DNA of 64,000 nt from NCBI RefSeq assembly GCF_963506605.1, contig NC_083277.1:51956001-52020000 (forward strand), read 5' to 3'. How positions within the stretch are numbered: position 1 is the first letter of the stretch; the number at the start of each line of letters is the position of its first letter. Under the pieces are notes generated by a model. That model saw nothing but the letters and a program-made list of their open reading frames with translations. It did no database searches and had not been told where the DNA came from. This stretch comes from Zootoca vivipara. Lineage: Eukaryota. This document shows positions 24,701 to 47,200 of the stretch, piece by piece. Position numbers and translations under genes: made by a program.

Positions 24701-27700
24701 CCCCTCCCCAGGCCCCCCCCATGTGTCGGTGACGACTGGAAGCCTAAAAACTCGGTGCTCTCCGAGCCCGTTGGTGTGAACACCTCCCCCCAGTCCTGCG
24801 AGCCCCCCCCTTCCGCCTGGGAGGACGGGAATCCCAAAAAGTCCGTGGCGTCAGAGCTGGTGGGGGTAAAAATGTTTTGCCAATCTGCTCCTTCCTCTGA
24901 CTGGGTGGATCTTGGCGACACCCATACCTCATCCTCTGGTTCCTCAAACTCCGCTTCCCAGCGCCATGGTGAGCTGTTCTCCCGTGCCTCCTCCTCCTCC
25001 CCCTCCCTTTCCATGTGCCAGGGCTTGGGTCTGTGGGGAAAGAGGGCGTGAAATTCTTCCACCAAGAATTCCTCCTGTATCTGAGTGGCGGGAACCCATT
25101 CATTCTGGGACGGTGGAGCATCCTCCCATGCCATGAGGTACTCCAGGCCCCCCACCCCCCACCTTGAATCCAGGATGGCCGTGGCCTCATTGAGTTGCTC
25201 CCTGCTTTCCCTCTCCCCCCCTCCCTCGGGGGTTTGTTCGCTGTCTCTGAGCCTGCTGCTTTCCCTGTACGGCGACAGCAGCGATCTATGAAACACTGGA
25301 TGCACCCTCATGTCCTCTGGCAGTGCCAGCCTGTATGCCACCGGGTTGACCTGTTGCGTGACCGTGAAGGGGCCCAGCCATTTGGGTGCCAGCTTTTTGC
25401 ACCTCCCTCTGGTGGGAAGGCCCTCCGAGGACAACCACACCTTGTCCCCCACCCTGATGACCTCCCCTTGTCGCCTGTGGCGATCTGCCCCCTTTTTGTA
25501 CGCTTCCTTGGCCCTCTCCAAGTGTTCTCTGAGCTGCTGGTGCACCGTCTCCAGTTCCTCTGCCCAATCCTCAGCCTGTGGGCCCTCCTCCTCCTCCTCC
25601 CTCTCCCTCTCTGGGAAAGATCTGAGGTCGCGCCCGTAATTGGCCTTAAAGGGCGACACCCCTGTGGAGACGTGCACTGCATTGTTGTAGGCAAATTCTG
25701 CTAGTGGCAAGCGATCCACCCAGTCCGTTTGCCGCTGGCTGACGTAGCATCTCAGGTACTGCTGCAGAATGGCGTTGACCCTCTCCGCTTGTCCGTTGGT
25801 CTGCGGGTGTCTAGCCGTCGACAAGCTGACCTCCACCTGCAGGAGGTTCATGAGCCGCCGCCAGAACCTGGAAACAAATTGGCGGCCACGATCCGAAATA
25901 ACCCTTAAAGGTAATCCATGCAGTCTGAAAATGTGATCAACAAACAGTTTGGCTGTCTCTTCTGCCGAGACTGCCCTGGCACACGGTATAAAGTGACACA
26001 TTTTGGACATGAGGTCCACCACCACCAACACTGCAGTCTTACCCCTGGACGAAGGCAGATCTGTGATGAAGTCCATGGACACCACTTCCCACGGCCTGTG
26101 TGGTGTGGCTAAGGGCTCCAGCAACCCTGGTGGCGCTGCTCTGACCACCTTCGCCCGCTGGCAGGTGGTACAGCCCCTTACATAGTCTCGAACATCTTCC
26201 CTCACCCCTGGCCACCAGAAGTGTCTCATGACTAGGTGAGTGGTCTTGTCCCTTCCAAAATGCCCCGCTGTAGGGTTGTCGTGCATCTGCTTGAGGACCG
26301 TACGTCGAAGCTGGGTGGTGGGTAGGTACAGCGCACCCTTGTAGAAAAGCAGCCCTCTGCGTTCTGCAAAGTCTTTTGCCTGCTCCCTCCCCCCTCTCAG
26401 TTCTCTGAAGATGCGGTTGGCAAATTCATCCGCTGCCGTCAGTGCTGTGAGTTCTGCCTCGCTCACCACTGCTGCTCCGCAGGACCATGCCGACGGGGGG
26501 AAAATGTGCCTTGGGGCTGGTGGCGCCTCCTCCTCCATGTACTCTGGCTTGCGGGAGAGGGCATCCGCCCTGACATTCTGCTCTCCTGGGATGTAGTGTA
26601 TGGAGAAGTTGAAGTTCGAGAAGAACTCCGCCCACCGTATCTGCCGCTGGTTGAGCACCCTGGCAGTTCTCCAGAACTCCAGGTTCTTGTGGTCTGTGCA
26701 CACCTGGATGGGGTGCTTGGCGCCCACCAGGAAGTGTCTCCAGTGCTGGAACGCCGCGTGGATCGCAAGAAGTTCCCGATCAAAAACTGTGTAGTTTCGC
26801 TCGGGCTGGGTCAACTTCCTGGAGAAGAAGGCACAGGGTCTCCACTCTCTGTTGGCGTCCAGTTGCAACAAAATGGCGCCCACAGCCTTATCAGAAGCAT
26901 CTGTTTCAATGCGTAGGGGCGCGTCCTGAACCACGTGGAACAGGTTCTGGTCTGAGGCGAACACCCTCTTGAGGCTTTAGAACGCTGCTTGCGCCTCTGG
27001 TGTCCACCTGAACTTCTGCTTGCCTCTCAGGCAGTCAGTGATGGGAGCCGTAACTCGAGAGAAGTTCTTGATGAACTTCCTGTAGAAGTTGGCAAAGCCT
27101 AGTAGGCGTTGGGCATCTTTGCGCGTCCTGGGGCTGTGCCAGTCCAGGATGGTCTGCACCTTGTCCTTGTCCATTGCCAGCCCCTTGTCTGACAGCTTGT
27201 AGCCCAGGAAGTCCACCTCCTTGGTGTGAAACTTGCACTTCTCCAGCTTCACATACAGGTGGTTCTCCTTCAGGCGCTGTAACACCTCCCTGACGTCCTT
27301 CACGTGCTGCACTGGGTCGTTGGAGTAAATAAGGATGTCATCCAGAAAGACCAAGCATTTCCTGAAGAGTAGGGACCCCAGGACGTGGTGCATGAAGGCC
27401 TGGAAGCATGCTGAGCCCCCTTGCAACCCGAAGGGCATCACCAGATATTCAAAAGAGCCCAGAGGCGTGAACATCGTGGTTTTCCACTCATCGCCTTCCC
27501 GGATCCTGATCAAGTTGTACGCCCCCCTCAGGTCTAGCTTGGTGAAAATCTTGCCTCTGCGTGCCGCTGTCAGGAGATCATCCACTCTGGGCATGGGGAA
27601 AGCCACTGGCTCTGTCACCGAATTCAGCCGTCTAAAATCCACCACAAGACGGCGCTGTTGCGTGTCTTTCTTGTCCACCCAGAAGACCGGGCTGCCCCCT

Positions 27701-30700
27701 GCTGCCTTGCTTTCTCTGATGAACCCCCGCTTGAGGTTCTTGTCGATAAAAGCGCGCAGATCCTCCAGTTCCTGGTCTGACATGGCGTACAGCTTGGCTG
27801 GGGGTATAGTTGCCCCAGGCACCAGGTTGATCTGGCAGTCAAAAGGCCTGTGTGGGGGCAGGTGGTCGGACTCCGCTTCACTGAAGACCTCCTGCAGGTC
27901 CCAGTATGGTTTGGGTATCGCCTCACCCCCTTTGACGTGCATGGTGGCCACCGTGGCTATCGGAGGCCCCTCCCCTGGTTGGTGCTGCATGCAATGTTCC
28001 AGGCAAAAGTCCGATCCAAAAGTGATGCATCTCTGATGCCAACTTATGGAGGGGTCGTGGCGCGCCAGCCAGCTCATGCCCAAAACGATTGGGGGGTCTG
28101 AGATGGTGGTGACGTTGAATGCCAGTGTCTCTGAGTGCCTTCCAACCGTCATTCTCATGGGGGGGGTTTGATGAGTGATGGCCCCTCCCAGCAGCTCTCT
28201 GCCGTCAATGGTTGCCACGTGCAGAGGAAAATCCAGCTGCAGAAGCTGGATCTGGTGCTCTTCTGCAAAGTTTCTCGAGAAGAAGTTGGCTGAGGCACCA
28301 CTGTCAATTAGGGCGAGGACCGTCAATGGATAGCCATTTGGGAGCGTGAGCGTCACTTCTAGAACCACTCCTGCTCTGGGAGGGGTGGGCTGGCTCTGCT
28401 CCTCTCTGTGCGGGTGGGTGGGCTGGGGCTGTTGTCTGCTGACTGTGCCTGGCTGCCGCCCCTTGTCTCCTGCAGCCAGGCTTTCCCGTTTCCCTGCTGT
28501 GGTGCTGCGTCAGTGGGGGAGGGCACAACCGTTCCCGCCTTTCCTTGCCACTCCCTGCGATGTGGGCAGTCTCTGACGAGATGCTGGGGGGAGTTGCAGA
28601 GAAAGCAATTCCCACCCCTTCCCTCCTTGCGTCTTGGCGCCGCTGGGGTTTGAAAAGCCCGCGCGCGCGCGCTATCAATCTGCATGGGTTCCTGGTCCTG
28701 ACTGGCCCCAGGCGTGGCTTGAAAGGGTTGTTGAGGGAGTGGCTTCTCCTGCGACCGTGGGAACCAAGCCCGCTTTGCGCGCGTTGCTTGCTTGTCGCTC
28801 CATCTGGATTCCTGCCTCACCCCCACCGCCAGAGCCGCTTTGCTCAGTTGATCCATATTACTGGGCTTTGGACCTCTCGAGAGCTCATCCTTCACCTCCT
28901 CATGCAACCCCAAGTAAAACGCCGCTTGCATTGGGGCAGACTCCAGATCCCACCCCAATCTGTGCACCAGCATGGTGAATTTCGCCCAATACGCGCGAAC
29001 TGTCATATTTCCTTGGCGTAAATTATGAAGTTCCTCCTTAGTCTGGTCCATATGACTATCGGACGAATACATCGTTTTCAAACCTTCTAGAAATAGTTTG
29101 ACATTCTTCATGCAAGGATTCCTTGTTGCAATTAACGGTCTTAGCCACTCCCTGGCCGCCCCTGTAAGGTGCTCCACAATAAACGCTACTCTGTGCTCAT
29201 CATCAGGGAACTCATCGTGGTGCAGCTCAAGAGCATACACAATCTCAGTCTCAAAGCCCTGAAACTCCTTCGGGTCTCCATTGAACTTGCTTACTAGGGT
29301 CCCGGCTCTCCTTCCTGGCAGCACTTGGACTTGGGGTGCCCCTCCCGCCTTGTTTTTCTCTGCATCCAGCTTGTTTTGGAGGTCTACCGCCACCGCCCTT
29401 AAATGCTGCTCTTTTTCCTGGAGCTCTCTCACCTGTTCCGCAAGTTGTAGCCGGTCGTCCTGGACCTTCTTAGTCTCCTCTTTAGCTGCCTTCAATTCTC
29501 CCTGCGCCTGCAGCGACAGCTGTTGCAGTTCTAGCTGGGCTTGCTCAGCGATCTGCCGCCACTTCTCCGCCTCTGACACGCTCATCCCGGCAACTCCAAA
29601 GTAGCCCAAAAATGATTAGGAGGTTGCTGTCACAGTGGCCGGAGTGGACTACTTCAGAGTAACGACGCTACGCAGCTCTGCATTTTATTCTTTTATTGGT
29701 GCTGCGTATTTACAGTGCTCAAGTCATTGCTATTTACACGGAGCGATGTTGTCAGTCGGTTTCAGAACCTCCTAATGGCTTTTGGCGCGTCTTTCTCCAA
29801 CACAAAAGCTTTGGCAGACCCATCCTCTTGCCCCTCCTCTTCCTGCGTAATTCTGGAGTTGGGGGGATGGGTCTTCCCCCCTTACTTGCCCCTTCCTGTC
29901 CCACCTGGGACCCTGGCTCCTCTACCTTGCCTGAGCCTCGGACACGACTTCCTGCTTCCCCACTGGAATCGGAACTCTCCCTGCTTTCCCCTTTGCTCGG
30001 GGACGGGCTTGAACTCAGGAGGGGAGGGACTTCGCGATATCCCCTGTCCCTCACAGGTTCCCTCCACCACCACACACTAATAAGTTTGGGCCTGATGTAT
30101 AGTGTGTCACTGTGCTAGGTAAAGGTAAAGGGACCCCTGACTATTAGGTCCAGTCGTGACCGACTCTGGGGTTGCGCGCTCAACTCACATTATTGGCCGA
30201 GGGAGCCGGCGTACAGCTTCCAGGTCATGTGGCTAGCATGACAAAGCCGCTTCTGGCGAACCAGAGCAGCACACGGAAACACCGTTTACCTTCCCGCTGT
30301 AGCGGTCCCTATTTATCTACTTGCACTTTGACGTGCTTTCGAACTGCTAGGTTGGCAGAATCGAACTGCTAGCTTGAACTGTGCTGATTACTTGCAAAAG
30401 CATTGTCATTGCTTGTGAAAGTCAATATTTGGAAGCCTACTGTAGAGAAACTATCAATATTAGGTAAAAAGTGGTCAGGGATAATGGGAGTTGGAGTTCT
30501 GTAACATCTGGAGGGCCACAGGCTCCCCATCTCTGAGATGCATAGTATTCAAGTCTTGATGGTAATCTACCAAATAGCTGTTCAAACTGTCGAAGTTACT
30601 CATTTGTGCTAAGAAGACAGTGATATATACATGCCAAGGTTCCAGCTTTTATGTACAGGGCAATAATATCCAAAGTGGTTAGTTTAAGATAAGTCATTTA

Positions 30701-33700
30701 GTGGACATTCCTTTCAAACCTGTTGGTCCATACGGGTTTGGAATTCCAGCAGAAACATGTTGATTGGCTGAAGGGAATATTACCCCAGGCTCAGGACTGT
30801 CGGGAGTTCAGTCTTCAGTAGGTTCAGTGAGGGAATTCAGAAGGAAGCCTAGAGACAGAACCCGAAGCTGGCAGCTGCTGAAGAGTGAGAGGTCAACATG
30901 GAAGGCTCTAGATGCTCGACAGAGAGGGAGCCTGTATGACTATAACTGGAATAACAGCATGCATCACATTAAACACTACCAAAATAAGACTAAAGAATTA
31001 TTTAACACGTAAAAAAATTAAATCTGAAAAACATCCAGAATAGAATCCAGCAGAATAAAATATCTGAAAAACACTCGGAATAAGATTCTGCATGCAGCCT
31101 TCGTATTTTCAGATAGCAATCAGATCAATTAGCATGCATCTTCCAAAATGCCTACAGACAGATACATTTTTCTTGCTGACTGAAAACTGATTTGCCTAAT
31201 TATATTTATTTATTTAAGGTAAATGCTATGTCACTGGTGTTAATTACCTCGAATCATTATACACCCAAATATCATTAGTGAAAGTCAATGTGTCTGTATT
31301 GGGGTGTGAGCAAAGACTTGCCTTACCCAAACTGGTGCCCTCTAGAAATTGCTGAACCCTCAACTCCCATCAGCTTCTGCCAGCATGGCCAATGGTCAGG
31401 GATGCTGAGAGTTGAAGGGCACCAACTTGGGAAGGCTGGCATAGACTCCTTTTCTTCACTGTGTAAATGTGTAAGGCTATAAAAGAGAGAGAGAAGGAAT
31501 GAAGATAAAGCCACATATACTGTATTGTTCTCTTTTCCTTTACTGAGTGCAGTTCACCCTGGTCTTATGTGAAACTGAGACTTTTAGTAGCACGTTATAC
31601 TTTATATTTAAAAACAAAACAAAACCCACAACCTGAAACAAGCTTTGGGCATATAGTGCTACTCTTAGGGAAATGCTGCCAGTTTTCATGCAGAAAAGTG
31701 GCAGCATAACAACAAAGAAAAAGCAATGGTAAAATAATGTTTTAAAACATGGCTGGGCCAAGTAAAAGTTAAGCTGTTTTAATACCATTGATTTTGGTGG
31801 GGGAATTGAGCACCTGCGTAGAACTCTGACACTGAATTAACTGTGCCTTGGACTGGATTGTGCTCTAGAATTTGATTAATAGAAGAGACTTTCCGGTGGA
31901 GCCCAGAATAAACAACAGGTTCTCTTTTCAAGCAGCTTGAAGCTACTTCTGAGGTTTTCCCTTTACTATCTGTACTGTTTTCAGCGTTGTAGCAACAGAT
32001 TATTTTCCTCTTCTCTAGACACGTTCAATATGAGAATGACTTTCCCTTCTATTTCTAGCTTTTGCGAACTGCAGAAGATGTAGCAAAAATGCAGGAAGAG
32101 CTAGAATTAGCACGCCCCCTGCTGGCTGAGGCTGCCCAAGACACGCTGGTAACCATGGAACAGATACAGGTACGCAGCAGGCCTTCAGACACTGTTGCAA
32201 AAGAGGCTGATGGTGCCCTGATAAAACAAGAAGGAGAAAAGAACCTGGACTTTGCCTTGTTAGCTTTAAGTTGGAGAAAGGGATGCCCATGTTGCATCTC
32301 TGCCTTGTTTTCACACTATACGTCCCACAGTTAAAATAATGGGGCAACACATTTGCCACAAGGACAGAAAACTTTTGTTGTTCTTTACTGCAAAAGGGGG
32401 TGCCATTTGGGTTTGTACTTTTGGCTCCAAAACCTGGCTTTTATACTAAACTCCAAATATTTAACCTTGCTATGTGAGGTGTGATGCTTATTTCAGACAA
32501 TCATGTTCATAAGAAGGACAGTCTCTTTATCTTTAGCCATGCATGCATAATAAAGAACTTGCAGCTACCATATACTACTTCCCAAGTGAGACAGGTAACC
32601 AAACACTGCAGGCTATCATTCTGTATCAGCAGTGTTCCTGTTCAGAGTTCTGGTCAGCTGTATCTGCTCCTAGCTCTTTTGAGAAAAGCATGTCCCTTGG
32701 GTGGTGGTGGTTGTTGTTGAATATTTTTCATGCTTTGGCAAACAATGACCTCATTAACACATCATGGTAAACCATAATTAATAGTTTACCGTGACTACAC
32801 TAATCCTGCTTGCTTTTTTCCAAGTGAGCAGGAAGAAAACAAACAAACCCCTGACTTAAAGTTTCATCTGAATTAGTGCTCATGGCTTGCTTCACTCCAA
32901 ACAAACATTAATCTGGTGTCCAAGTTTTTCTTTGGCTTAATGTGGGCTTGTGGCTTTTTTTTCGGGGCTGGGCTGGGGAGTGAAACAAGCCACAATCCTG
33001 TATTCAGATGTAATCCTAAAACAACTGTTGTGGTTTGTCGTCGTCCCCCCATGTGCTAGTGAGAGCCATGTGTTTAGGATTAGCCGTTAACTATGATTTA
33101 CCATGGCAGGCAGACTGGGCCTCTCACTGATACAGAAAAGGTGCTTCTAGCCCGTCCTGAAAGCATTTGTGATTCCAGATACCTTTGTGCTGCTGCAGGT
33201 AGACACGGCTGTAGCAGAAGAAACACGGAATGCTGTGCAGGCAGAGGAAATGAAAGCCAAAGTCAAAGCTCAGACCGCTCAGGCTATTGCTGATGACGCA
33301 CAGAAGGACCTGGCAGAAGCCCTGCCTGCCCTGGATGCTGCCCTTGCCAGCTTGAGGAACCTCAATAAAAATGATGTTACAGAGGTAAAAGCTATTCTTT
33401 CTCAACTCTGTTAGCAATACTTTCAACAAGAATGCTAGTCATACCAGTCTGTGCTTTACCATGGATACATGTTCAATAGTGACACCCCCTAAACACCCCA
33501 CCCATTCTGATTTTCAAACTTTTTTTCTTGTAAGTGAGTTGTAGCAGTTTATTCCTTTTGATAGCTGTCCCTGAAGAGGAATAATCTAATTCTTTTCAGC
33601 CAAAGGTATGTCATGCCCTTGGCCCAACCCTTTGGGTGCTGCACACTGGCAGAGGGGTCATATGCAGTGTGCACGCTCTCTCACCCACATCCCGGCCATC

Positions 33701-36700
33701 ACATACACAGACATGCAGATGCATGTACACAGATCAAACATTGCCCCTCACTCATCAAATGATAAATCTGATGAGGGACGGGGAGCAGTCTGCACTTGCT
33801 GGAGAGGCTGAAATGATGGGTAGCAGCATCCCTCTACTACGTTAACTCTTTGGACTCGAATGGTTTTATGGTAATGTTAGCATCTAGCTTCATTTCACTA
33901 GATGAGATGAGTAAGGGAAGTAAAAGCATAAATCACATCACGCAGCACAATCCTGTTCATGTCATTTCAGAAGTTAGTCCTATTGAATTCAATGGCCAAC
34001 TCCCTTTGAATAGATTATTGAGCCACTACAAAGCTTCCTAGCTGGAAAAAACATTGATAGCTGCTGAATACAGGCAGAAAATTAGTGCTACAGATCCTTG
34101 TCTCATTTTCTGTTCACTGACATTTGAAGATACATGCTGGGTTACTAGTATTATCTGGCACTTCCAGAAAATTTAGAGGGGCTATTGTCAGTTATGTTCC
34201 CCCTGTTCAAGAGTTGGGTTTATTTAGCCAGCTGTCAATTTGACTGATGTTGTGCCTAGAGATGATCTTAAGAGTTGAGTCATATGGAGATTTTTTAATG
34301 CTCTAGATGTGTACTTTTGCTATGCATGTGAAGACTTATTGTTAGTTGGTGTCCATCCCAACAAGTAGCTCATCTGTATTGTCAGGTGCCAGCAGCAGGT
34401 CACCAAAGCCTTGGATAGGTGTATTCAGATATGTGCAATATCTTGTAGTATGTCTTAATTGCATAGTGGAAAATGCAGTTATATTGAGCTACTGACTGGT
34501 GTATGAAAAGAGAGCCCCTCCATAACCTTACTTCAGAATTCTGGGGGAAAACATATTTTAACTTATGATAAAATGTGTGGATCCTGTTGGCAATGAAATT
34601 ATCTAAAAATAGGCTCCTATAATAAGTTATTATGACCAGTTTCCACCAGGATTCTGCAATGCCTGTCACCATATCCTATTTGAAAGGTAAAGGGAGATTG
34701 TGTTTCAATAATTATATTGCAACATTAGCATGTTTCTAGGCTAGTTGGCCCTTTAACAAATACAGTAGTTAAAATTAAAGTGAACATTACTTTTATTAGC
34801 ATATTTCAGTGAGTTGTTTTCAATATAAAACAAGCAATATACCTGAAACTGTTACACACTATATTTTCAGCCATGGAACTTCTTGTATTACCACAATTTA
34901 AGACGGCAAAAAATGGACCCTGACCATTAAACAATACCTTCTTGATTGTGCAACCAGGTTCTTCTTTCATCACAGTTTTTTTGAATAACATCAGTAATTG
35001 AGATAGAAAAATAGGTAGACAATAAATATGCAGGCAAGCAGAAAAGGGCATCGCCCCATCTTAGAAGTATGCACTGTAGCTTTTAGTTTTAACCAACATC
35101 TCAGGCCGCCCATCCATCACTACTTCCAACATTTTACTCAGACTCTGAAGTGAAAAAAACAGACTGTAGTTTAAGAGCCTTTTTTACCAAGTCATTGTAG
35201 GGAAGAATCAGGTATATGGATCAGGTCCAAATCAGTCTATTTTACAAAGAGAACATAGCAATGTAAGCTTTCATGAACAGGATTCTCCCTAAGGAGACTT
35301 TCCATTCAGTCTAGATGAAGATAAGATGTGACTACCTTCAAGCAAGCTGGAGGACTATTTTCTGCTGAACTACTCTCATGTGATTATACCAACACCTAAG
35401 AAAATGCCAGGGTCTGTTTCTCAGCTTCTTGCACCAGCTCCTTCAGCTGTTCTGGGTTAGTGAAGAAATGCATGTAGAGGCTGCGCTCAGTTTGCTGAAA
35501 GTGGCTCTGCAAGGATTTTTGCTTGGCCTTCACCTCACTCAAGGTGTCCATTAGCATTTGGTAGAGTTTGGCTTGTGTGGTGCAAAGCTGCTCCAGAGGT
35601 TCTTCTAGTCCCTTTAGAAAATAGGTGTCAAAACAAATAGGGGTTCAGAAGCAGCAGCACATATTTCTCCAATTTTCCATCATTTAGAAGTTTCACAGGG
35701 AGGGAAGTTTGCTACTTAAGGAGGACCAGGAGTCCCAAGAGTACAACACTTAATGGTGTAGCAAAAGCAAAGATCATTGTGTGCCATTAATTTGGTCTAT
35801 TCTTGTGATTATTAATAGATAATGCAGTATAGCAAGAAAAGGAAAATTCACACACATGATGGGCTACAGCTTTTGCTTACCTGAGCATGAAGCATTAGCT
35901 GGTTGCAGTCCCCATACATCAAACAGTGAAGTACCTCATTGTCAGACTCCAGTTTAGGAAGCTGGGAGTGTGGTGTGGCCAGCTGCACTTTGAGCATCCT
36001 GAGCTCCTGGCATAACCGGGAGCCCCAGCCTGCCAAGGCCCCATAGGCATGGAAGAGTTGCTTATCTTGACTGTGCCTGTTTAGCATCTCCCACAGCCTA
36101 AGGAGGAAAGGAATACATAAGACGCATCCATTAGAAGCTTTGGGAAATTGCATCCATGACAGTTCTTGGCCTTGTGACAGCGAGAAAAGAGAGAGATCCA
36201 TATACTTTGAAAGTGGCTGCGCTATAGATGACTAGAGTGACTATAGGACTGTGCTGGGTTTCTTGTAGATCTGCTGCTGCGAGAGAATTTTGAGTATTTG
36301 AAAGATTCAACCCGAGTCAGACTTGATGGTTGTTTAGCTGAATTAACAATTAGGAGTTTATATGTCGATTCATCTCAAAGTGATTTAAATCTACTGCATA
36401 AATGACTATGGCTCTTTACCAACACCCATTCTAGTGGGCTGCATAAAAGAAATGGGCGAGAAGGTCCTAACATATTTTATCTTCAATAGGTTATGCTTCA
36501 TTTTAGTCACATACCAGCTTATTTTTCTTTTCTAATGAGCCCCATTAGAAGTATTCCACCCTAAGGAAGTATTTCCTTGTTCCTAACACTTGCAGCCATT
36601 TGATACCTTTCCCCTGCCATAGCTCATCTGATCTTTACCGTAACATGGTGAGATCACTGGGGTCTATCAGAGTACGCGGGCATTGCTTAACAGAGAACCT

Positions 36701-39700
36701 TGAATCCTCAAAGCAGGCTTGCCATTCCTGTAATTTAGCATGTGATTCATTCGAGGTAGCCACCATCCCCTCCAGCTGGGTCTTCATCTGTTGCAGATTC
36801 TTCTGCTCATGCATCAGCAAGAGCCACAGCAGCTCCAAATGGCTCCAGTGGACCATCATTTGGCCAGCAGCTTGTTCTTGCATTGATAAAATATGACCAA
36901 GTCTCCTGGCTTCCAAAGCGAGTTCCCCACATACTACAGGCAAGCGAAGGAGGTGGGCACTGGTCTGGAGCAAAGGGACAAGCTTTTTGGTTTTTGCCTG
37001 TCTAACCTCCCTTTGGAGGATGTACAACTGCTCCTGGAAAGTGGCTCTACGAAGATACAGTTCTCCTTTCTCTTCCTTCACCTGTAGAAGAGAAGGACAT
37101 TAAATTCCACATCCCCCTGCAGTTCTGGAAGGCCTCTATGAACTTTGCAAGTAAAACCACCAGTTTTGTTGGCAAGTATTCTCCTATCCCATGGGACTCT
37201 TTAAAATACTATTGGGAATGACATCATAGTATTTAAACCCATATATCTTGTTAAAAGTAACTCACAAAACTGAGAATAAAGCAGAACACAATACAAATAG
37301 CTTAGGACTAGATTGGTCCAGAGGACCTGTTAAGTTCTGATTTTCTAAGCCTAGATATCCAGTGATTATATAAGCTTTCTTTATGAAGCTTAGCAATCAA
37401 GAGTCCATAAAGTGGGAGGTAAAAATTTACTCAAAACATGGGGCAGCAGCATTCTTTTTGTCCGTGTTTGCAGCATAATTAATACATTATATACAGCTTA
37501 TATACAAATAAGATGTCACTTAAATATGAACATTGCAAGGGGATTTTTGCTGTCACCCCAATCTATTAGTTTTTGACTTCATGGTTGGGAACTAGGGTTG
37601 CCAGACTCAATAGAGGATGGGACTTCTGTGCCTTTAATTGCCCTGCTCTCTTTTGAGTCTGGAAACCTTAAAGAGAAACCAGCAGACCCTTTGTTTAATT
37701 TCCAAGCAAAGGGTCTGCTGGTTTCTCTTTAAGGTTTCCAGACTCAAAAGAGAGCAGGGCAATTAAAGGCACAGAAGTCCTGTCCTCTATTGAGTCTGGC
37801 AACCCTATTGGGAAGATGTTGGATATACATTCCAGACTTTAAGTGAAAAACTGCATGTTGCTTTTACTTTTCTCTCCTGCCCTGCCCCACTTTCTAATGT
37901 TTCTCTTATTTTCATTCACCCCCAGCAAGGGATTCCTTTGTTGCTCTAGAGAAACTGCTTTCACCACCACCACCACCACCAGTCATTCATTTCCTCCTCT
38001 CCAGAAGCATGTCACTTATCCCAAACCTGCCAGTTTCAGCCTTCATGAATGCCCTCTACATCCACAAAATTTTAATGTACAGGGGTTGGCTCCTGATGGA
38101 GGGATACAGTCAGAGGTGGACAAAATCAGACACCAGCTCTGATGAATGCAGAGCCAAGCAGGGGCTTGTGTGACAAAGAGAGTACTTGTTGCTGAGCTTT
38201 ATAGCATTCACTACAGGTGAAAAAAAGATGTCAGTCTAGTGGTTCAAACCCATTCACCAAGTGCAACAGATGAATTAGTCTCACTCTTTTATTATTTGTA
38301 TATCTCAACACATTTCTGTCTTGCAGAGACTTTTGTATTACAAGTGCTTACTGTCATTTACTAAACCTTGTTTATTTAAGCCAGGCAGCTAGTGACCTAC
38401 CTTGTTCTCCTTAGCAGCCTTGAGGGCCTTCCCTGCCCATTTCAAGGTAGATGAAATTCCTTTAATGTTTGCAGAGGTCACGAGTGCCTTTTCCTGACTG
38501 CACATGTAAGCCAATGCCATGCGCTCCAGTTCTTCCTGATAGCTGCTCAGGTTGTCATCTTTGGGATGCTCCATTTCATCAGCTTCTCCCCGCAGCTTCA
38601 ACCCTCCTTGACAACCATCCTGAACGGTTCTGAAGTTCTCACTTTCCATTCGGTCTGTTTCTTGTGGCAGAGCTTTACAAGTAAACTCTGGCTCGTTCTT
38701 ATTGGCCAGCTGCCCCTTGGAGAGAACTTGGCTTTTCAGTGTGCCATATGTCATTATGTGACCTTCAGAATCATTATTGCAGATTGTACTCTTACTATCT
38801 AGCAGCACTTTCTGAGCTTGCCGTTCCATAGACCCTGTATTCAGTTTTTCCCAAGAGTCTCCCTGCCCCCTTTTCACCAGAACTGTTTGATCAGCTTCCA
38901 CATCGCTGACAACATCTGGCAAGACCTTTGGTGAGAATCCCAATAAAGCCTTTGTGACTTTTTCTTCCAATTCGAGGCAATGTTCCAGGTCCGCTGCTGC
39001 CATTGAGGCTTCCTGCCGCTTGCTTGCCGGCTTCCTGTGCCACTGCATCAGCTCCTTCACTTTCTTACAGGCTTGGCTGAGAGCATCATTGCTCTGAAAG
39101 TTCTCTGGCTCTAGCCGCAGGTGTGCCTTCTTCAGCTCCCGGCTTGCTTTCTCTTTCTTCTCAGCTGAATGACAGAGCTCCCGCTTCAAGCTGGCTAGAT
39201 AAATTTGGAGCTTGGTGCGCTGCTTTACCCGACAGGCGCATTGGCTCTTCAGGGTCTGCACCTCTTGTTCAAGTGTCTCGAGAGGCAGGGTGTCATTCTC
39301 CTGTATAGCACACCTGAGCTGAGAGGCTTGGCGGCAGGTCTTTAACACCTGTTCCAGTGCTTCACCTTCCAGAACAGGCTTCCCAGAAATGACCAGTTTC
39401 TCATAGGCCTCCAGTTCTGTAGAACTGGATACATTCTCCTCCCCCACTATGTTGCAGAAAGACTCGAGAAACTGTTCTGTCTCAGGACAATCAAAGAGCC
39501 AGTCAAAGTCTTTCTCCTGAAGACCATCTGCCTTCGGATAAACAAATTTCAGGGTCTCCACAAACTCACTTCCTCTGTTAACTGTATCCAGGAGGAAAGC
39601 TCTGGAGCGTCTACGTGAGAGCATGTTCTGGTTCTTCTAACCCTGGAGGGAGCAGATGCAACTTGCTTATTAAAATGCAGGGAGGTCTCCCTTGTGCCCA

Positions 39701-41244
39701 CCTATGCTATAATTGCACAAGCAAGACCTTTAATAGAGGTGTGCACCAACCATAAGATTTTGACTTGTATCTTCAGCTTTGGGAAGCAGTCCAGTCTTTT
39801 TTTGGAGTCACTCCATCTTTCCAGCTTGACTCATTTTGTGGGGGGATCAAATTCATTCTACTAATAACAAAGCTCTGCTTTTCCTACCGGTACATTCAGT
39901 AATGGAAAATCTAAACATGGCTACAATTTTTTCTCCTTTCACAGAATTTGATGAAATTTGCAGATATAGGAGCCCTACTAGGGTTGATTAAGTCTGCCAA
40001 ATTGTATGCAGATCCATTGGGGGGGGTTATACAAAGAGCATATTACCCAGCAAAGAACCCAGGCAAGTAGACAGTCTTCTCCTCCCAACTCAGAGAGGGA
40101 TAGTTGGGGATACAGAATATTCCCCCTGGGAAAGAATGCAGCACTCATTTTGAAAAGCAGCGTGGGGGGCACTCAGTTCTACAGAGGAACTTGGGACTTT
40201 AGAGAGTCTCCAGTCAGTCTGATTCACTCATGTGAAAGCCTTACCCAAATCACCCCTATTTGCTTCATTAATCTGGGAAGTACACAGAGCTGATGCACAC
40301 CCCTAGTATTGGTTATCTGAATTCCACACCTTGAGAATTTTAGTGTTAACTTTCTTCATGCATTTGGGTGTTAAAATAGCTTTTATCTTGGAAGCATGCA
40401 GATAATAATTGGTTAAATCTTATAAAGGAGGATCAAGCAGGATTGCTCATGGTCAGGGAAAAGTTTCAGGGCCCTACATAAATACTTGTTCTGCCCTTTG
40501 GATACTATTCCCCAGCTTCTTCACACAGAGACCATGACCACCCTGGAGCAATCCTGTGAGCCAAATGATTCACTTTGCATTTTTATTTGCAACACCATCA
40601 TTGCAGGATGTTGGACCAGATGACCCTCGGGGTCCTTTCCAACTCAGCAATTCTGTGAGCAAACCCCACTGGTGCAGTAGCAAAACAACAATGCATGTAG
40701 TCTTTTTTTAGCCACTCTTTGTAACTTACCTCTGTAACCCTGGGAGCAAACTGTAGCCTGGAGTTCTCTTATACCTATTTCTGCAGAAACCAGTAGGGGA
40801 AACTTTTCACAGCACAAAGATCAAGTATTAGCGCCTGCTAATTGTCCTGGTTGCAAACTGCTGTGTTAAAGCTATATCGGAAGCCAATTGACAAATTGGT
40901 AAGATTAGTTTCTATCCAGTAACTGTACTCCTATATCCAACATCTGCCTTTTGTATTGATCATCACTGCCGTCCTGTCTGTACAATTTCTGCTCATGAGT
41001 GGCAGTGCAATGAAAGCCAATCAGTTCTAGTATGCTCAGTATTTTCCCAGTGCTACATAATAGGGGAGCTCATCCCATTGCATTCCAAAAAGACATTCTT
41101 GAGATTCTTCTCCTTGCATGCATACCTACCTAGCCATCTGATGGCAAACATTGGGACACTTCAGCCATTATTTGCATCAGGTGGTTTTATCCATAATTGA
41201 ATGTGCACTTACCTGAAAGTAAATTTAGTGGAGCTTCCAAGTGT

Positions 41245-41286
<42 letters not shown>

Positions 41287-44200
41287 ACACAGAGGTAGGA
41301 TGACAATAATCTAAACCGGGGAAAGCACAAATGTTCTTTTCTCACTCAGTGTGGTTCTGACATTGAATGACAACTTGCAAACATGAAACCATCTTCAAAG
41401 ATCCGACAACAGGGACAGTTTTCATATAATGCCAAGCACAGTATTGTTCACTCATAAAGCTTTGAGTGACTAAGGCTCACTGTCCTAACCTCGATTACCT
41501 GGGAGTAAGCCGCATGGAATTCAACAGGGTTTACTTTTGAGTAGACATGGTTAAGATTGTGCCATAAATTAGGCAACACTAAGTAATCTAGACCAGATGT
41601 GAGAAACCATTGGCCATGCTTGCTGGGGTTGATGGGAGCTTTAGTTCAGCAGCATCTGAACAGCCAAAGGTTCCTCATACTTGAGCTGAACAAAGAAGGT
41701 CAGGGCCCTGCATCCTTAATGGATATGCAGAAGAGAGAATTTGAAAGGGTGGCCTGCTGAAAAAGAAGACTGAGCCCCTTTAATAGTTATGTAGAAGGAG
41801 GACTTTCAGCTGGTGTTGCTTATATTATGTGCTGCAGCTGCTAACATCCCTCTTCTACATAGCTATTAAAGGTTTGGGAGCTTTGTCTTTTTCAACTGGC
41901 CACCCTAGGATTTGAACATTTACTGCAGTTCATGTCCTGAAATTCTCTTTTCTACATGATGAAAGGTTTATGAACCCAGTCTTCCTTTTGCCTCATGCCA
42001 CTAGGCACGTGTAAATCAAACATAGCTGCCAAGTTTTCCCTTTTCTCGCGAGGAAGCCTATTCAGCATAATGGAATATCCCTTTAAAAAAGGGATAACTT
42101 GGCAGCTATGAAATCAAACCTAAGGAGGTGGTGTTTCAAAACCTGAAGAAGCAGCCATTTTCAGGGCAGCTATCATCTCTCCTCCCAAGAAATAAGAACC
42201 ACACCTTCAAAACTACTGCATTTAAACATGCCACTGGGTAGTATTCAGCAAGCCCATCCTGTGCTTGTGCGGTGGAACTTGTCCCCTTCTTCCCCCTCCC
42301 CCTTGCACACACTCCATGCCCCTTCCAATTCTGCTTCATGGGGTTGGGAAACCCCTAGAATAGATTTAAGGGGTGCATGGCAAGGAGGAGGAAAAATTCC
42401 ATTCCACAAGCAAAAATCCTTAAGCTGACAGAATGTTCAGTCAGTGGTACTTTGGATTCTATCCTTTCCACTAGTCTCAAAAAAATAAAATCTCTTGTCC
42501 AATTTTTCATCTACCTGCAATTTGCAGACTACTGGGGTATGCTGTGTACTCTTGGTATCTCAGTTTTCTCTCCTGCAAATCTTCTCACCTCTTCAACTGT
42601 ACCTGCCAAAATCACTGACCACCTCCTCCCTACCAAATTCAAAGGTCTCTAGTCCTCACTCCCCTTGACCTCTATTCTCCCTTTCAAATTGATCACTCTC
42701 TCTTGCTTGGCTCCCCTTTTGCCCTAAGTTTCCATGATTCTGCCCTCAATGAGTTCTTTTCCTACATGCCTAATTGCTCTTTCAGCATTTTCATACAAGA
42801 AAGCTATTCTCCTACTTTCCTTCCTGTGTTGTGGTTCCTATTCTTGCCTTTCTGCTGTTCTTCCCCTACACACATTGTAGAGTGGCTTTAAGTACCACCT
42901 AGGTATATGATGCTAATGCCCAGTTCTGCCTCGCTATCCTAAAATTTCCCCCTTTCATCTGATGTCATATGTACAAGTACTTCACTGGTTATTTCTTTTT
43001 GGTAGTTCCGCTGTTGTCTCAAACTCATTACATCCAAGACCAAACTTCTCATTGTTTGTTCCAACCCCTTCACACTATCAGTATTCATTGATAACACCAC
43101 CATCTACCCTGTTGAAAAGGTACACTGTCCTCTCCCTCTTTCCTTTGGCCCTTTTTTTTCTGACATCTTGGCAAAGGTGATTCAGTCCCTGGTCATCTTG
43201 CATCTTAATCACTGCAATCTTCTCTCAGCATCGTTGCCTCATTTTTGTTCCCCTGACCTCAGTCCAGCACTTGGTTGTCAAAAAACATTCAACTCTCTTA
43301 TAATGCTGGCCATATGATACACTTTCTTAAGTTCCTAGACTGCCTGACTGTTCCCAGATCTAGCACAGACTTCTTACCTGTTCAGTTATCCGCATGGTCC
43401 CTTGTTGTTGTTTAGTCGTTTAGTCGTATCCGACTCTTCATGACCCCATGGACCATAGCACGCCAGGCACTCCTGTCTTCTTCTGCCTCCCGCAGTTTGG
43501 TCAAACTCATGTTGGTAGCTTTGAGAACACTGTCCAACCATCTTGTCCTCTGTTGTCCCCTTCTCCTTGTGCCCTCAATCTTTCCCAGCATCAGGGTATT
43601 TTCCTGGGAGTCTTCTCTTCTCTTCTCATGAGGTGGTCAAAGTCTTGGAGCCTCAGCTTCAGGATCTGTCCTTCCAGGGAGCACTCAGGGCTGATTTTCT
43701 TAAGAATGGATAGGTTTGATCTTCTTGCAGTCCATGGGGCTCTCAAGAGTCTCCTCCAGCACCATAATTCAAAAGCATCAATTCTTCGGCGATCAGCCTT
43801 CTTTATGGTCCAGCTCTCACTTCCATACATCACTACTGGGAAAACCATAGCTTTAACTATACGGACCTTTGTAGGCAAGGTGATGTCTCTGCTTTTTAAG
43901 ATGTCTAGGTTTGTCATTGCTTTTCTCCCAAGAAGCAGGCGCCTTTTAATTTCGTGACTGCATGGTCCCTTACCCCTCTTCATTCTTATAGCCTGATGCA
44001 TTCCTGCCTGTGATCTTCACTTGTCCCTCTCTGCCACCCTCTGCTGCCCAAAGGTCTTTTGCTCTTTGCAGCCTCCCAGAATGTCCCCATGATGCCATCC
44101 TATCTTCAAACCCCTCCTACTTTTCCACGAAGCCTTTAGCAGAACCCCGCTAGTCCTCATGCCATTGTAACTAAGCTTAAATACATGTCACTGAAGTAAT

Positions 44201-47200
44201 ATTGTATTCTTGCCCGTTTTACCCCTTCCTTTGTTGTCTTCCTTGAGTCAGTTTGTAGACAGTAAGCCCCTTGCGGGGAGGGACCTATCCTTTCTTTGTT
44301 TGTAAAGTGCTGTGTACATGGATGGCGTTATATCAACAATGGCAATGATCAGAGGAAGGGCACTCTGCTTTATGAATGGTGGTGCTCTTTTAAAGACCCT
44401 ATTCTAATTTTGATTTATTTCATGCCTCAGGACTGAAGTCCAGGATAGTTAGGAATGCCCTTCAGCAGGTGTGACATTATACTGAATGACTGATCCACTT
44501 CTTTCCCCCTGTTTCCAACTAGGTGCGAGCGATGCAGCGTCCTCCACTTGGGGTAAAGATGGTGATTGAAGCTGTCTGCATTATGAAGGGTATCAAGCCC
44601 AAGAAAGTGGCAGGAGAGAAACTAGGTTCCAAGGTAGATGACTATTGGGAACCTGGCAAAGTCCTCCTTCAGGACCCAGGGAAATTCCTTGAAGGCTTGT
44701 TTAAATATGATAAGGTAAGTACCATAGTAGTTAGTCAGGCAGGCAGGCAGTCATCCTCTCTCTTCCATGCTCCTCCCATCCAACTGACCAGAATAAAACG
44801 TCCTTGGCTTCTCCTGTGCTTTTAGTAACAGCTTGATCTAGAAGCAACAGCAGGTGAAGCGCTTCCTGGCATGGGAATAAACTTTTCGTCTGCTAAAGTC
44901 TACAGAGGGAGTTGTTATTAAAAGCTCAGAAGCAAGGGCTAGTAAAAAAAAGAAAAAGGGCAAGCCTAAGTACCGTACTAGTGTAGTTGGCATAATTGTG
45001 GGACTTAAGCTTGCCATCTAGTCAATCAAATGCTTTTCTCTCATAGCTTTTTTGGTTCGTGCTAGTAAAGCTCAATTTATTTAGTTAATGGGCATATATT
45101 TCAGAGAAATACTACATCCAATATGCTACATCTCTGGGTAGGGATTTCTAAGATGCCCCTTTTTCCTCCCCTCACAACCTCCCCATATCTGATGTATTTG
45201 GCAGGGAGGGAGGGAGGGAGGAGGCACCTACCATTTCCCCCTTAATTTTCTTTTGGCTCAAGCCTGGATATGAGCTTCAAGGTCTCACCATGTGCGTTTC
45301 AGAGAAGCAGCCATCCTTGCAAATCCTTAGATTCTTCTTTGGAGTAGATTAAAATCCAAGGGAGACAAGAACTCCTGGTTTAATATCCTCCCGCCCATGC
45401 CACAAATCCCAAAAACACAGCCAGGAGAAATTCGACAAGGGCCTTTCCTGGCAAGGAAGCATTTGGTGACAGTGAAATCTTTCAAAGCAGTTGTCTCCAT
45501 TGACGCCCATCAGGGCTGCTTTGAAAAAATGCACCTGAAAAATGATTTTGTGTAAGGGCAAGATGGAAATGCCACTACTCACAGGGGATCCTGCTGCTCC
45601 AATAGTCTCCTGCCCCTAAGATTAATTTTCACAGGTATAGCTCCTGTTGGAGACCAACCACCCCACATTTCTTAGGAGGTGCATCCCCTTTATAGTACCT
45701 TATTCCATTAAATGTTGTAATTAAACTACAATTCAGTTAAACAGAGGGGTTGAAAGAAGCCCCACACAGTGAAACTGCTGATGGGAATAAACACATTATA
45801 TCTGCAGAGAATCCTTCAGGCTAAAGGGTCTTACAATCTGGGTGGCTTCCAACAAAATATTAAAATACAATAGTCTGTTAAACATTAAAAGCTTCCCTAA
45901 ACAGGGCTGCCCTTAGGCAGGGGAGAGTTCTCTTAGCCATACAAAGCTGTCATTTGACAGCCAAGGATCTGGGAGGTGTGCAAGCAATGCCTGGCTGTCA
46001 AATGGGGAAAGAGGGTCAAGTTCATTCCACATCCCAATTTTGGGAGGAAATGGCTCGATTTATTCCCAAGTTAAGGTTGTGTAAAACATGGATCATGCAT
46101 CTATCTGTAGTCACAGGCTGGCTATGAAGCAAATGTCAGTGATGATGTTCCCCATTAAGGGATGTGATGAGAGGAATACTTGGCTGTCCTTTTGACCGTG
46201 ATTAGTCACTGGACACTCCTTGGCCTACTCACCTTTTGATTCTTGGCCTGAACCAGCAGATGAAAATAAATGGTTTCCTTTCCCTCCACTTTTTGGGGAG
46301 GTAATGATAGCCTGTACTGCCCACATTGCCTTGCAGTAATAAAAGCCATCTTGAAAGAATGAACAAGCAATGCCCTAAGCTTGGCTTGAAGCTCAAAACA
46401 GAGAAGGGAGTGCACAATTGGGAGTTTATGCTTTTCCTGCCGCACTGATGAATTTTTGCCATGGGATTTGGTTCTGCCGCACAGCTGACTCCCCTGATGT
46501 CTCAGACCTTGATGCTCCCAGCACTCATAATCTCTTCTTTAACCCTTTCAGGACAACATTGCAGATTCAGTAATTAAGTTAATCCAGCCATATATCGACA
46601 GTGAAGAATTTCAGCCAGCAGCCATAGCCAAAGTGTCCAAAGCCTGCACATCTATCTGCCAGTGGGTCAGGGCCATGCATAAGTATCACTTCGTGGCAAA
46701 AGCTGTGGAGCCAAAACGAGTAAGAACTACAGCAGTGCTTCTTCAAAGTTATTGCATGTACACCTAAAACTCAATGGAGCCTCTTCCCGCCCCCATTGCT
46801 GCTAACCACAGTTATTTTCCTTGGAATTATGGCAGAACTTGAGATCCACAAATATTTCTCTCTCTCCACAGCAAGCCTTGAGGGAGGCTGAAGAAGATCT
46901 CCAGGCCACACAGAAGATTCTGGATGAGGCCAAGGAGCGTCTTCGAGAAGTGGAAGATGGCATTGCCAACCTGCAGGCCAAATACCAAGGTACTCTGGCC
47001 ACAAAAGAGGAACTCGAGATGAAGTGTGATCAGTGTGAGCAGAGACTGGGTCGGGCTGACAAGGTAAGGGCCACGGGCACAACTGTGGATTCTCCTCCCC
47101 CATTCCTTTCACCAGGCCTCACCTACCACTTGTTGGGGCAAGATAGAAGACAGGGAGCAGAGGCTGAAGGAAATAACTGGGGGCGAAGAAACAGCTTTCT

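What the first reader, a model, noticed from the sequence alone, without database searches (positions are those of the whole stretch)
35396..39642. Intact divergent HAUS3 (augmin) homologue nested antisense inside a dynein gene
Seen: four exons splice into an uninterrupted 699-aa ORF within the 11.1-kb intron (33385-44522) at the stalk/MTBD boundary; it has introns, so it is not a retrocopy. Known: HAUS3 is a core augmin subunit for branching microtubule nucleation, normally single copy, and in human lies at the POLN locus rather than in DNAH1. Its divergence from recalled HAUS3 looks too great for an orthologue. Inference: a little-studied second HAUS3 that could build a variant, possibly germline or ciliated-cell, augmin complex, embedded in another microtubule gene.
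Basis: partly seen in the sequence, partly recalled or inferred. Interest (0 to 1): 0.8.

Follow-up and report, generated by a model that had tools for sequence, protein, structure and literature searches.

The report
Ancient second HAUS3 gene inside DNAH1
A lizard dynein gene carries, inside one intron and on the opposite strand, an intact and spliced copy of the augmin subunit HAUS3; it belongs to an old second HAUS3 lineage that lungfish, amphibians, reptiles, birds and echidna keep beside the ordinary one, and that was not found in placental or marsupial mammals.

Summary
On the minus strand, four GT-AG coding exons (39624-38401, 37081-36639, 36097-35881, 35611-35396) give 2100 nt, or 699 codons. 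They lie inside the 11,137-nt DNAH1 intron 33386-44522. A transcriptome contig from a close relative carries exactly these splices, plus an upstream non-coding exon ending at 40730.

The protein is clearly HAUS3 family (Pfam PF14932 E 8e-35; human HAUS3 7sqk_C E 2e-34). It is not the orthologue of human HAUS3. A rooted tree splits vertebrate HAUS3 into two clades:
- Clade A holds human, the Xenopus protein used for cryo-EM, fishes and shark.
- Clade B holds this gene, all ~700-aa sauropsid "HAUS3", echidna, amphibians and lungfish.

Seven species carry both, including the lacertid Podarcis muralis.

Clade B evolves about twice as fast as A. It keeps conserved N- and C-terminal parts and has a disordered ~120-aa sauropsid insert.

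Its function is inferred, not shown: an alternative HAUS3 subunit, possibly germline. Chicken "HAUS3L" falls with oocyte genes in one follicle study. The gene is annotated in databases, but I found no paper on the paralogy.

The parts
40730..40794 (-). Upstream non-coding exon of the HAUS3-B transcript. The 3' end is exact; the 5' end is a minimum, because the true start was not seen.
   Evidence: A 93-nt contig of X1 joins 63 nt of other sequence to 39644/39642. Its first 30 nt match 40732-40761 exactly. The donor AG|GTAAGT lies at 40730|40729.
38401..39642 (-). First coding exon: acceptor at 39643/39642, ATG at 39624, 408 codons. It holds the HAUS-augmin3 N-terminal domain.
   Evidence: PF14932 E 8.1e-35. 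Human HAUS3 7sqk_C E 2.1e-34. 94% identical to P0001 residues 1-408. Splice shown in the X1 contig.
38557..38916 (-). Sauropsid-specific insert, residues ~237-356, predicted disordered and poorly conserved.
   Evidence: pLDDT is under 50 across 237-356. These columns are gaps in clade A and in non-sauropsid clade B. Squamate conservation is 0.52-0.59 here against 0.82-0.89 at the ends.
36639..37081 (-). Second coding exon (443 nt), central coiled coil.
   Evidence: 91% identical to P0001 residues 409-555. Joints 37079/38399 and 36096/36638 in the X1 contig.
35881..36097 (-). Third coding exon (217 nt).
   Evidence: 99% identical to P0001 residues 557-628. Joints in the X1 contig.
34777..35611 (-). 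Last exon: 71 codons, stop TAG at 35398-35396, about 620 nt of 3' UTR, AATAAA at 34797-34792. The 3' end is approximate.
   Evidence: 96% identical to P0001 residues 629-699. The X1 contig runs about 23 nt past 34800. The AATAAA signal is seen.
33199..33385 (+). DNAH1 exon before the host intron (stalk coiled coil 1).
   Evidence: Human DNAH1 8j07_g6 residues 2872-2941, E 1.7e-26. The next best chain is DNAH6 at E 9e-14. PF12777 hit. Splice sites read.
33386..44522 (+). Host intron of DNAH1 (11,137 nt). It holds the whole HAUS3-B transcription unit on the opposite strand.
   Evidence: Donor GT at 33386. Acceptor AG at 44521-44522.
44523..44714 (+). DNAH1 exon after the host intron (microtubule-binding domain).
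   Evidence: Human DNAH1 residues 2938-3003, E 3.6e-30. Donor at 44715.

Best explanation
This is the lizard copy of an ancient second HAUS3 gene, called clade B here; chicken annotation uses the symbol HAUS3L. It is a complete transcription unit of at least five exons. It lies antisense inside the DNAH1 intron that separates the stalk from the microtubule-binding domain, and it overlaps no DNAH1 exon.

Origin. It arose by a DNA-level duplication of HAUS3, no later than the lungfish-tetrapod ancestor. It has since been kept beside the ordinary, POLN-linked HAUS3 (clade A) in lungfish, amphibians, reptiles and birds. Echidna has it too. No therian copy was found.

Function (inferred). The protein keeps the full HAUS3 layout: a small N-terminal helical bundle, long coiled coils that fold back on themselves, and a C-terminal helical part. 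The most likely role is therefore to take the HAUS3 position in the augmin TIII tetramer, paired with HAUS5, in a restricted set of cells. Germline or oocyte is the best guess. The ~120-residue disordered sauropsid insert would sit near the hairpin tip of the HAUS3/HAUS5 arm.

Confidence is split. Gene identity, intactness, paralogy and nesting are shown; I put that part at about 0.95. Complex membership, the cell type and the role of the insert are inferred; I put that part at about 0.5.
For: Gene model and splicing. Family: PF14932 at 121 bits; human and Xenopus HAUS3 chains are the only strong PDB matches. A model of the 94%-identical P0001 aligns over its full length to 8at3_B (E 5.6e-17) and 7sqk_C (E 1.5e-14).

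Paralogy. The every-protein search gave 108 hits, and named members showed two copies each in Protopterus and Rhinatrema. Bird clade A proteins come from the same species as bird clade B proteins. Podarcis muralis and Carettochelys clade A proteins were found. In the careful tree rooted on invertebrates, the B split has support 100/99, A plus shark plus ray-finned fishes has 97/81, and both clades broadly follow the species tree. The window's exon 1 is only 34% identical to the P. muralis A-type.

Mode of duplication. The intron after the first coding exon sits at the same alignment column and phase in A and B.

Constraint. Full-length proteins of ~683-712 aa are listed for about 25 squamates. 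The termini are conserved and the insert is variable. Coding divergence from the relative is 2.3-3.1%, against about 5% in the 3' UTR.

Biology. Augmin architecture and HAUS3-HAUS5 pairing: PMC9512787. The solved Xenopus HAUS3 is clade A. Chicken HAUS3L is among the ten most down-regulated genes in F6 versus small yellow follicles, beside EIF4E1B and SPIRE1L (PMC7367319).
Against: - No exon reads in three RNA runs of the same species. Only about 6% of each run was read and the tissues are unknown.
- The monomer model is poor (pLDDT 62.8, pTM 0.23), so no interface could be judged.
- Clade B evolves about twice as fast as A (branch lengths). That fits relaxed or changed function as well as specialisation.
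- Of 9 listed coding differences from the relative, 5 change the residue. That gives a rough dN/dS near 0.4, but the sample is too small to exclude 1.
- That chicken HAUS3L equals clade B is by elimination, not checked by sequence.
- Nesting in DNAH1 outside this window rests on indirect hints only: Rhineura's copy is filed under BAP1, and bird copies sit on 20-26 Mb chromosomes.
Confidence: 0.6

Rival explanations
1. It is an old HAUS3 paralogue, as above, but it has left augmin. It would be a fast-evolving coiled-coil protein with a new partner or role, for example at centrosomes or cilia, and it would not replace HAUS3-A in the complex.
For: Clade B branches are about twice as long as A. 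Identity to A is only 24-40% per exon. A 120-residue insert sits in the arm that contacts the other half of augmin. Echidna, amphibian and lungfish B proteins are very divergent from each other.
Against: The whole HAUS3 layout is kept end to end. The parts most conserved between A and B are the N-terminal bundle and the C-terminal end, which contact other HAUS subunits in the solved complexes. No other family matches the protein.
Confidence: 0.27
2. It is a slowly decaying, functionless duplicate that merely happens to be still open in this lizard.
For: No exon reads in three RNA runs of the same species. The rough nonsynonymous share is 5 of 9. Evolution is fast.
Against: Full-length proteins are listed for about 25 squamates plus turtles, crocodilians, birds, echidna, amphibians and lungfish. 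That means retention for over 400 million years. Conservation is uneven, with constrained termini and a free insert. A correctly spliced, polyadenylation-signal-bearing mRNA exists in a relative.
Confidence: 0.05
3. It is the only HAUS3 of this genome: the orthologue of human HAUS3, moved from the POLN locus into DNAH1.
For: NCBI names most sauropsid copies simply 'HAUS augmin-like complex subunit 3'.
Against: Podarcis muralis has a clade A HAUS3 (P0371) as well as a clade B one (P0003). An earlier scan note reports a second intact HAUS3 elsewhere in this genome (not verified by me). Birds and a turtle have both. The tree separates the clades at 100/99.
Confidence: 0.03
4. It is a recent squamate- or sauropsid-specific duplicate, or a retrocopy.
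For: The ~120-aa insert is sauropsid-specific.
Against: There are four introns, one of them at the same column and phase as in clade A. Clade B includes lungfish, caecilian, salamanders, frogs and echidna. Holding all sarcopterygian A and B together as one clade is disfavoured (AU p 0.015).
Confidence: 0.02

Closest known systems
HAUS3 of human and Xenopus (augmin subunit 3; PDB 7sqk_C, 8at2_C/8at3_B), here called clade A
   Same: It has the same Pfam N-terminal domain. It has the same order of helices over the full length (Foldseek E 1e-14 to 6e-17). It has a large first coding exon ending at the same column and phase. A non-coding first exon lies upstream, as in clade A.
   Different: It belongs to a separate clade (100/99), with 24-40% identity per exon. 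It is about 100 residues longer because of a disordered insert. It evolves about twice as fast. It sits in a DNAH1 intron rather than sharing a first exon with POLN (PMC4591814, abstract). All biochemistry and all solved structures are of clade A.
Chicken HAUS3L (NCBI Gene 101751348) and the ~700-aa sauropsid proteins annotated 'HAUS augmin-like complex subunit 3' or 'uncharacterized LOC'
   Same: The sauropsid proteins fall in clade B with this gene. The P. raffonei protein P0001 is 91-99% identical exon by exon and has the same 699-aa length.
   Different: Nothing of substance: this is the same gene in another lacertid. That HAUS3L is the clade B gene is inferred by elimination (birds show only two clades). 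I did not check it by sequence.
POLN-HAUS3 overlapping gene pair
   Same: In both cases a HAUS3 gene is physically entangled with a larger gene, and the entanglement appears conserved. A HAUS3 gene with a non-coding first exon is embedded in or overlaps a large neighbour. Rhineura's copy is filed as a BAP1 isoform, which hints at exon sharing with a neighbour there too.
   Different: Here the copy is antisense and wholly inside one intron of the host. I saw no shared exon in this window.

Membership tests
HAUS3 / augmin subunit 3 family | N-terminal HAUS-augmin3 domain (PF14932) above Pfam's gathering score | tested here: met
   121 bits against a cut-off of 29.4, E 8.1e-35, profile positions 1-259 of 260.
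HAUS3 / augmin subunit 3 family | Central coiled-coil (PF27044) and C-terminal (PF27045) HAUS3 domains | tested here: inconclusive
   The local Pfam copy gave no hit for exons 2-4 scanned alone. Precomputed Pfam lists both domains for P0001, and the window's exons 2-4 are 91-99% identical and colinear with P0001.
HAUS3 / augmin subunit 3 family | Full-length colinearity with solved HAUS3 chains | tested here: met
   The model of P0001 aligns over 692-697 columns to 8at3_B (E 5.6e-17) and 7sqk_C (E 1.5e-14), and the next hit is at E 0.3. TM-scores are low, as expected for long flexible helices and a pTM 0.23 model.
HAUS3 / augmin subunit 3 family | Assembles with HAUS5, HAUS1 and HAUS4 into the TIII tetramer of augmin | not testable with these tools
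   No multimer prediction or interaction data were available. The architecture is taken from PMC9512787.
Orthologue of human HAUS3 (clade A) | Groups with human and Xenopus HAUS3 in a rooted tree | tested here: not met
   The careful tree rooted on invertebrates places the window's exon 1 in clade B. The B split has support 100/99.
Orthologue of human HAUS3 (clade A) | Is the lineage's only HAUS3 | tested here: not met
   Podarcis muralis has P0371 (A) and P0003 (B). The same holds for Carettochelys, Cariama, Opisthocomus, Spheniscus humboldti, Rhinatrema and Protopterus.
Orthologue of human HAUS3 (clade A) | Shares its first exon with POLN | tested here: not met
   The gene and its upstream exon lie inside a DNAH1 intron. 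The POLN arrangement is described in PMC4591814.
Processed retrocopy | Intronless copy of the mRNA | tested here: not met
   There are four GT-AG introns, all removed in the relative's transcripts. The first coding intron is at the same position as in clade A.
HAUS3 clade B (HAUS3L-type) | Falls in clade B and carries the sauropsid insert between the two arms of the central coiled coil | tested here: met
   Tree. Insert columns are present in sauropsid B and are gaps in A and in non-sauropsid B.

The most novel reading that the evidence does not exclude
Non-therian sarcopterygians run two kinds of augmin. A housekeeping complex carries HAUS3-A. A germline or oocyte complex carries the fast-evolving HAUS3-B, whose insert retunes how the two halves of augmin or the gamma-tubulin ring complex are engaged. 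Therian mammals lost the second kind. The nesting in DNAH1, or transcript sharing with the neighbouring BAP1, would be an old conserved arrangement that couples its expression to that locus.
Probability: 0.25. Interest if true: 0.75.

Novelty: new variant of a known kind. Interest (0 to 1): 0.6.

Why it matters
Augmin is treated as an eight-subunit complex with one gene per subunit in animals. All structures and biochemistry use clade A HAUS3.

A second HAUS3 kept for over 400 million years in lungfish, amphibians, reptiles, birds and a monotreme, but not found in therians, would have three consequences:
- Work on chicken, and possibly on some amphibians, may involve two HAUS3 proteins.
- It offers a natural experiment on which HAUS3 surfaces must stay fixed.
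- It opens a testable question about specialised spindle or oocyte microtubule nucleation.

Annotation also needs fixing. Both genes usually carry the same name, and some clade B copies are filed as 'uncharacterized' or under BAP1.

Tried and rejected
I therefore could not read the gene neighbourhood of any relative, and synteny of clade B in other species and of clade A in lizards remains untested.
- A word search with a bird clade A protein returned only birds in its 120 rows. A reptile-like exon-1 fragment (P0157) was needed as query to reach the lacertid and turtle clade A proteins.
- The protein-atlas search gave only phylum-level taxa and did not help.
- The search of earlier findings by sequence was blank.
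- The same-species RNA runs X9-X11 laid reads only on a palindromic repeat, not on exons.
- A shorebird paper that mentions both HAUS3 and DNAH1 only lists them in a GO table. The POLN paper does not discuss HAUS3 paralogues.
- A proper dN/dS was not possible, because no relative's CDS was available. Only 9 coding differences from the reads table could be classed.
- A duplication confined to the sarcopterygian stem was tested and is disfavoured (AU p 0.015). Long-branch pull on clade B makes the date uncertain.
- The joined four-exon protein was never assembled or searched. Exons were handled separately by reference, and the 94%-identical P0001 served as the full-length proxy.
Full report
**What is in the sequence.** The minus strand between 39.6 and 35.4 kb holds four open pieces.
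- All boundaries are consensus splice sites: 39624-38401, 37081-36639, 36097-35881 and 35611-35396.
- The pieces sum to 2100 nt, or 699 codons plus a TAG stop.
I never joined them and never searched a joined model. The codon split across the second and third coding exons was simply left out.
- Each piece aligns end to end with a 699-aa protein of Podarcis raffonei (P0001): residues 1-408, 409-555, 557-628 and 629-699, at 94, 91, 99 and 96% identity.
- The window is therefore from a lacertid lizard. In the tree it sits just outside P. raffonei plus P. muralis.

**Transcript evidence.** I laid four runs on 34800-40600, which is 5801 letters and within the operators' limit.
- Run X1 is a small assembly from a close relative, about 97% identical. 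Its 2740-nt contig at depth 11.5 skips exactly the three predicted introns (1319, 541 and 269 nt, GT..AG on the minus strand). It continues through about 620 nt of 3' UTR.
- An AATAAA lies at 34797-34792, about 15-20 nt before the contig's end.
- A second 93-nt X1 contig joins the first coding exon at 39642 to 63 nt of other sequence. Its first 30 nt match 40732-40761 exactly.
- The genome there reads AG|GTAAGT at 40730|40729, and at 39643/39642 it reads a pyrimidine tract followed by AG.
- Three RNA runs of the same species showed no reads on exons. Only about 6% of each was read and the tissues are unknown. They showed reads only on a palindromic repeat in the first coding intron. This is a weak negative.

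**Host gene.**
- The + strand exon 33199-33385 matches human DNAH1 residues 2872-2941. Exon 44523-44714 matches residues 2938-3003.
- E-values are 1e-26 to 1e-31, against 1e-13 or worse for DNAH6, DNAH2, DNAH3, DNAH7 and DNAH12. Splice sites were read.
- The intron between them, 33386-44522, is 11,137 nt. It contains the whole HAUS3-like transcription unit on the opposite strand, and no exons overlap.

**Family.** Exon 1 alone scores 121 bits on Pfam PF14932 (cut-off 29.4). Its only strong PDB matches are HAUS3 of human (7sqk_C, E 2e-34) and Xenopus (8at2_C, E 8e-27).
- An AlphaFold model of P0001, built with a 44-sequence alignment, is poor globally (pLDDT 62.8, pTM 0.23). That is expected for an obligate coiled-coil subunit.
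- Its helices follow the HAUS3 order: a small N-terminal bundle at 17-98, long helices at 115-248 and 347-533, and a C-terminal helical part at 552-698.
- Foldseek finds only the two augmin HAUS3 chains with significance, over the full length (E 5.6e-17 and 1.5e-14; the next hit is at E 0.3).

**Not the orthologue of human HAUS3.**
- The first word search found ~683-712-aa relatives in about 25 squamates, and ~685-720-aa ones in turtles, crocodilians and birds. Mammalian HAUS3 came in only at 35-41% identity.
- Shorter ~605-aa bird entries proved to be the same gene with the insert left out of the prediction.
- The every-protein search with P0001 gave 108 hits. Naming the representatives showed two different HAUS3 proteins each in Protopterus annectens and Rhinatrema bivittatum, and a 614-aa kakapo HAUS3 only 32% identical to the query.
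- Searching with that kakapo protein gave a second HAUS3 in the same bird species that have the ~700-aa form: Cariama, Opisthocomus, Spheniscus humboldti and Ardeotis.
- A 306-aa unnamed fragment (P0157) placed among amniote clade A sequences. Used as query, it led to a clade A HAUS3 of Podarcis muralis (P0371, UniProt A0A670IHE4) and of the turtle Carettochelys (P0428). Both species also have clade B proteins (P0003, P0043).

**The tree.** I built a careful IQ-TREE tree of 44 rows, rooted on amphioxus, abalone and other invertebrates.
- Clade A holds elephant shark, sturgeon, teleosts, lungfish, caecilian, frogs, mammals, turtle, lizard and birds (support 97/81).
- Clade B holds lungfish, caecilian, salamanders, frogs, echidna, turtles, alligator, birds and squamates including the window. 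The branch separating it has support 100/99.
- Each clade broadly repeats the species tree.
- The Xenopus protein used for cryo-EM is clade A: 776 bits to a clade A frog protein, against 148 bits for a clade B frog protein.

**Age and mode of the duplication.**
- Holding all sarcopterygian A and B together, which would mean a duplication in the lobe-fin stem, costs 18 log-likelihood units (AU p 0.015). Taken at face value, the duplication is older than bony vertebrates and B was lost in sharks and ray-finned fishes.
- Clade B's long branches make this unsafe. I claim only 'no later than the lungfish-tetrapod ancestor'.
- No therian clade B protein appeared among the 108 hits, only echidna. This depends on what has been annotated.
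- The intron after the first coding exon lies at the same alignment column and phase in A and B. Genomic exon pieces of both clades end with a V read from the GT donor at that column. So the duplication was at the DNA level, not by retroposition.

**Location of the two genes.**
- Clade A shares its first exon with POLN in vertebrates (PMC4591814, abstract).
- Bird clade A proteins sit on chromosomes of mostly about 85-97 Mb (range 48-169 Mb among chromosome-scale records). Bird clade B proteins sit on chromosomes of about 20-26 Mb (contig lengths). From memory, that fits chicken chromosomes 4 and 12, the latter carrying DNAH1 and BAP1.
- Rhineura's clade B protein is filed as 'BAP1 isoform X3'. 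From memory, BAP1 is DNAH1's neighbour in human.
- These are hints, not tests.
That would be the clade A gene. I confirmed that a lacertid has a clade A gene, but not where it lies.

**Constraint.**
- Among 18 squamates, residues 1-100 and 526-699 are 0.82-0.89 conserved per column. Residues about 235-350 are 0.52-0.59.
- That stretch is an insert. It is absent from clade A and from non-sauropsid clade B, and it is predicted disordered (pLDDT under 50 across 237-356).
- Against the relative, coding exons differ by 2.3-3.1% and the 3' UTR by about 5% plus indels.
- Of the 9 coding differences listed, 5 change the residue, all conservatively. That gives a rough dN/dS near 0.4, far too few to be firm.
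- Path lengths between the same species pairs are about twice as long in B as in A. For example, Podarcis to Carettochelys is 0.93 against 0.46, and Cariama to Spheniscus is 0.175 against 0.093.
- Retention of full-length proteins across all these lineages is the strongest sign of selection.

**How it most likely works (inference).**
- In augmin, HAUS3 pairs along its length with HAUS5. The two fold back to form the H3/H5 arm, their N-termini form a small bundle, and their C-terminal parts join HAUS1 and HAUS4. The TIII tetramer binds the gamma-tubulin ring complex through NEDD1, and the arm contacts the TII half (PMC9512787).
- HAUS3-B keeps all these elements. It is most like clade A in the N-terminal bundle (about 34% over residues 18-233) and the last exon (about 41%), and least like it in the middle (24-30%).
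- I therefore expect it to occupy the HAUS3 position.
- The sauropsid insert falls between the parts of the protein that align to human residues ~221 and ~256. That is near the turn of the arm, where it could alter contact with TII. This is a guess.
- For the cell type, the only data are from chicken. HAUS3L (Gene 101751348) is among the ten most down-regulated genes in F6 versus small yellow follicles (log2 fold change -6.1), beside EIF4E1B and SPIRE1L (PMC7367319). From memory, I take those two for oocyte genes. This fits an oocyte transcript diluted as follicles grow.
- That HAUS3L is clade B follows by elimination only.

**Novelty.**
- The gene is predicted in many genomes, so the sequence itself is not new.
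- Full-text searches for HAUS3 with 'paralog', for HAUS3L, HAUS3-like and HAUS3B, and for augmin with gene duplication found no paper that describes two vertebrate HAUS3 lineages.
- I rate it a new variant of a known kind: real, old and neglected, with untested function.

**Limits.**
- There is no synteny outside this window, no codon-model test and no multimer model.
- There is no positive expression in this species itself.

Noticed in passing
window 24370-29609 (-): A Ty3/gypsy-type retroelement with long open gag, protease-RT and RNaseH-integrase-chromodomain frames. It lies in a GC-rich (56%) block inside an upstream DNAH1 intron. Other first-stage notes already cover it.
   Followed up: partly
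window 49218-51242 (+): A 674-aa open frame with a reverse-transcriptase domain (RVT_1, E 8e-41). It is probably a LINE, downstream of the host intron.
   Followed up: no
window 37593-37807: A near-perfect palindrome with 104-nt arms, 97% complementary, and a 7-nt loop, in the first coding intron of HAUS3-B. It is the only place where the same-species RNA runs laid reads, almost all with loose ends. This points to a dispersed, transcribed MITE-like repeat family.
   Followed up: partly
window about 43400-43960 (-): A stretch that, from memory, reads like the 3' part of a BovB/RTE-type LINE, inside the host intron upstream of the HAUS3-B non-coding exon. I did not test it. The opposite-strand ORF gave no Pfam hit.
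   Followed up: no
P0002 (Rhineura floridana): A pure clade B HAUS3 protein (705 aa, 72% identical over all of exon 1) is named 'ubiquitin carboxyl-terminal hydrolase BAP1 isoform X3'. This suggests a transcript model that shares exons with the neighbouring BAP1 gene, or a mis-merge.
   Followed up: no
P0117 and P0111 (Crotalus adamanteus): There are two HAUS3-B-like entries on contigs of different length. P0111 is 95-99% identical to C. tigris. P0117 is only 78% identical, and in the first, quick tree it sits on a long branch. It may be an extra snake copy, a pseudogene or a poor prediction.
   Followed up: partly
Crocodilian and Hemicordylus clade B proteins (P0032, P0036, P0037, P0006): These are annotated 'uncharacterized protein LOC...', while other species' clade B proteins are called HAUS3. 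Naming of the two paralogues is inconsistent across databases.
   Followed up: no
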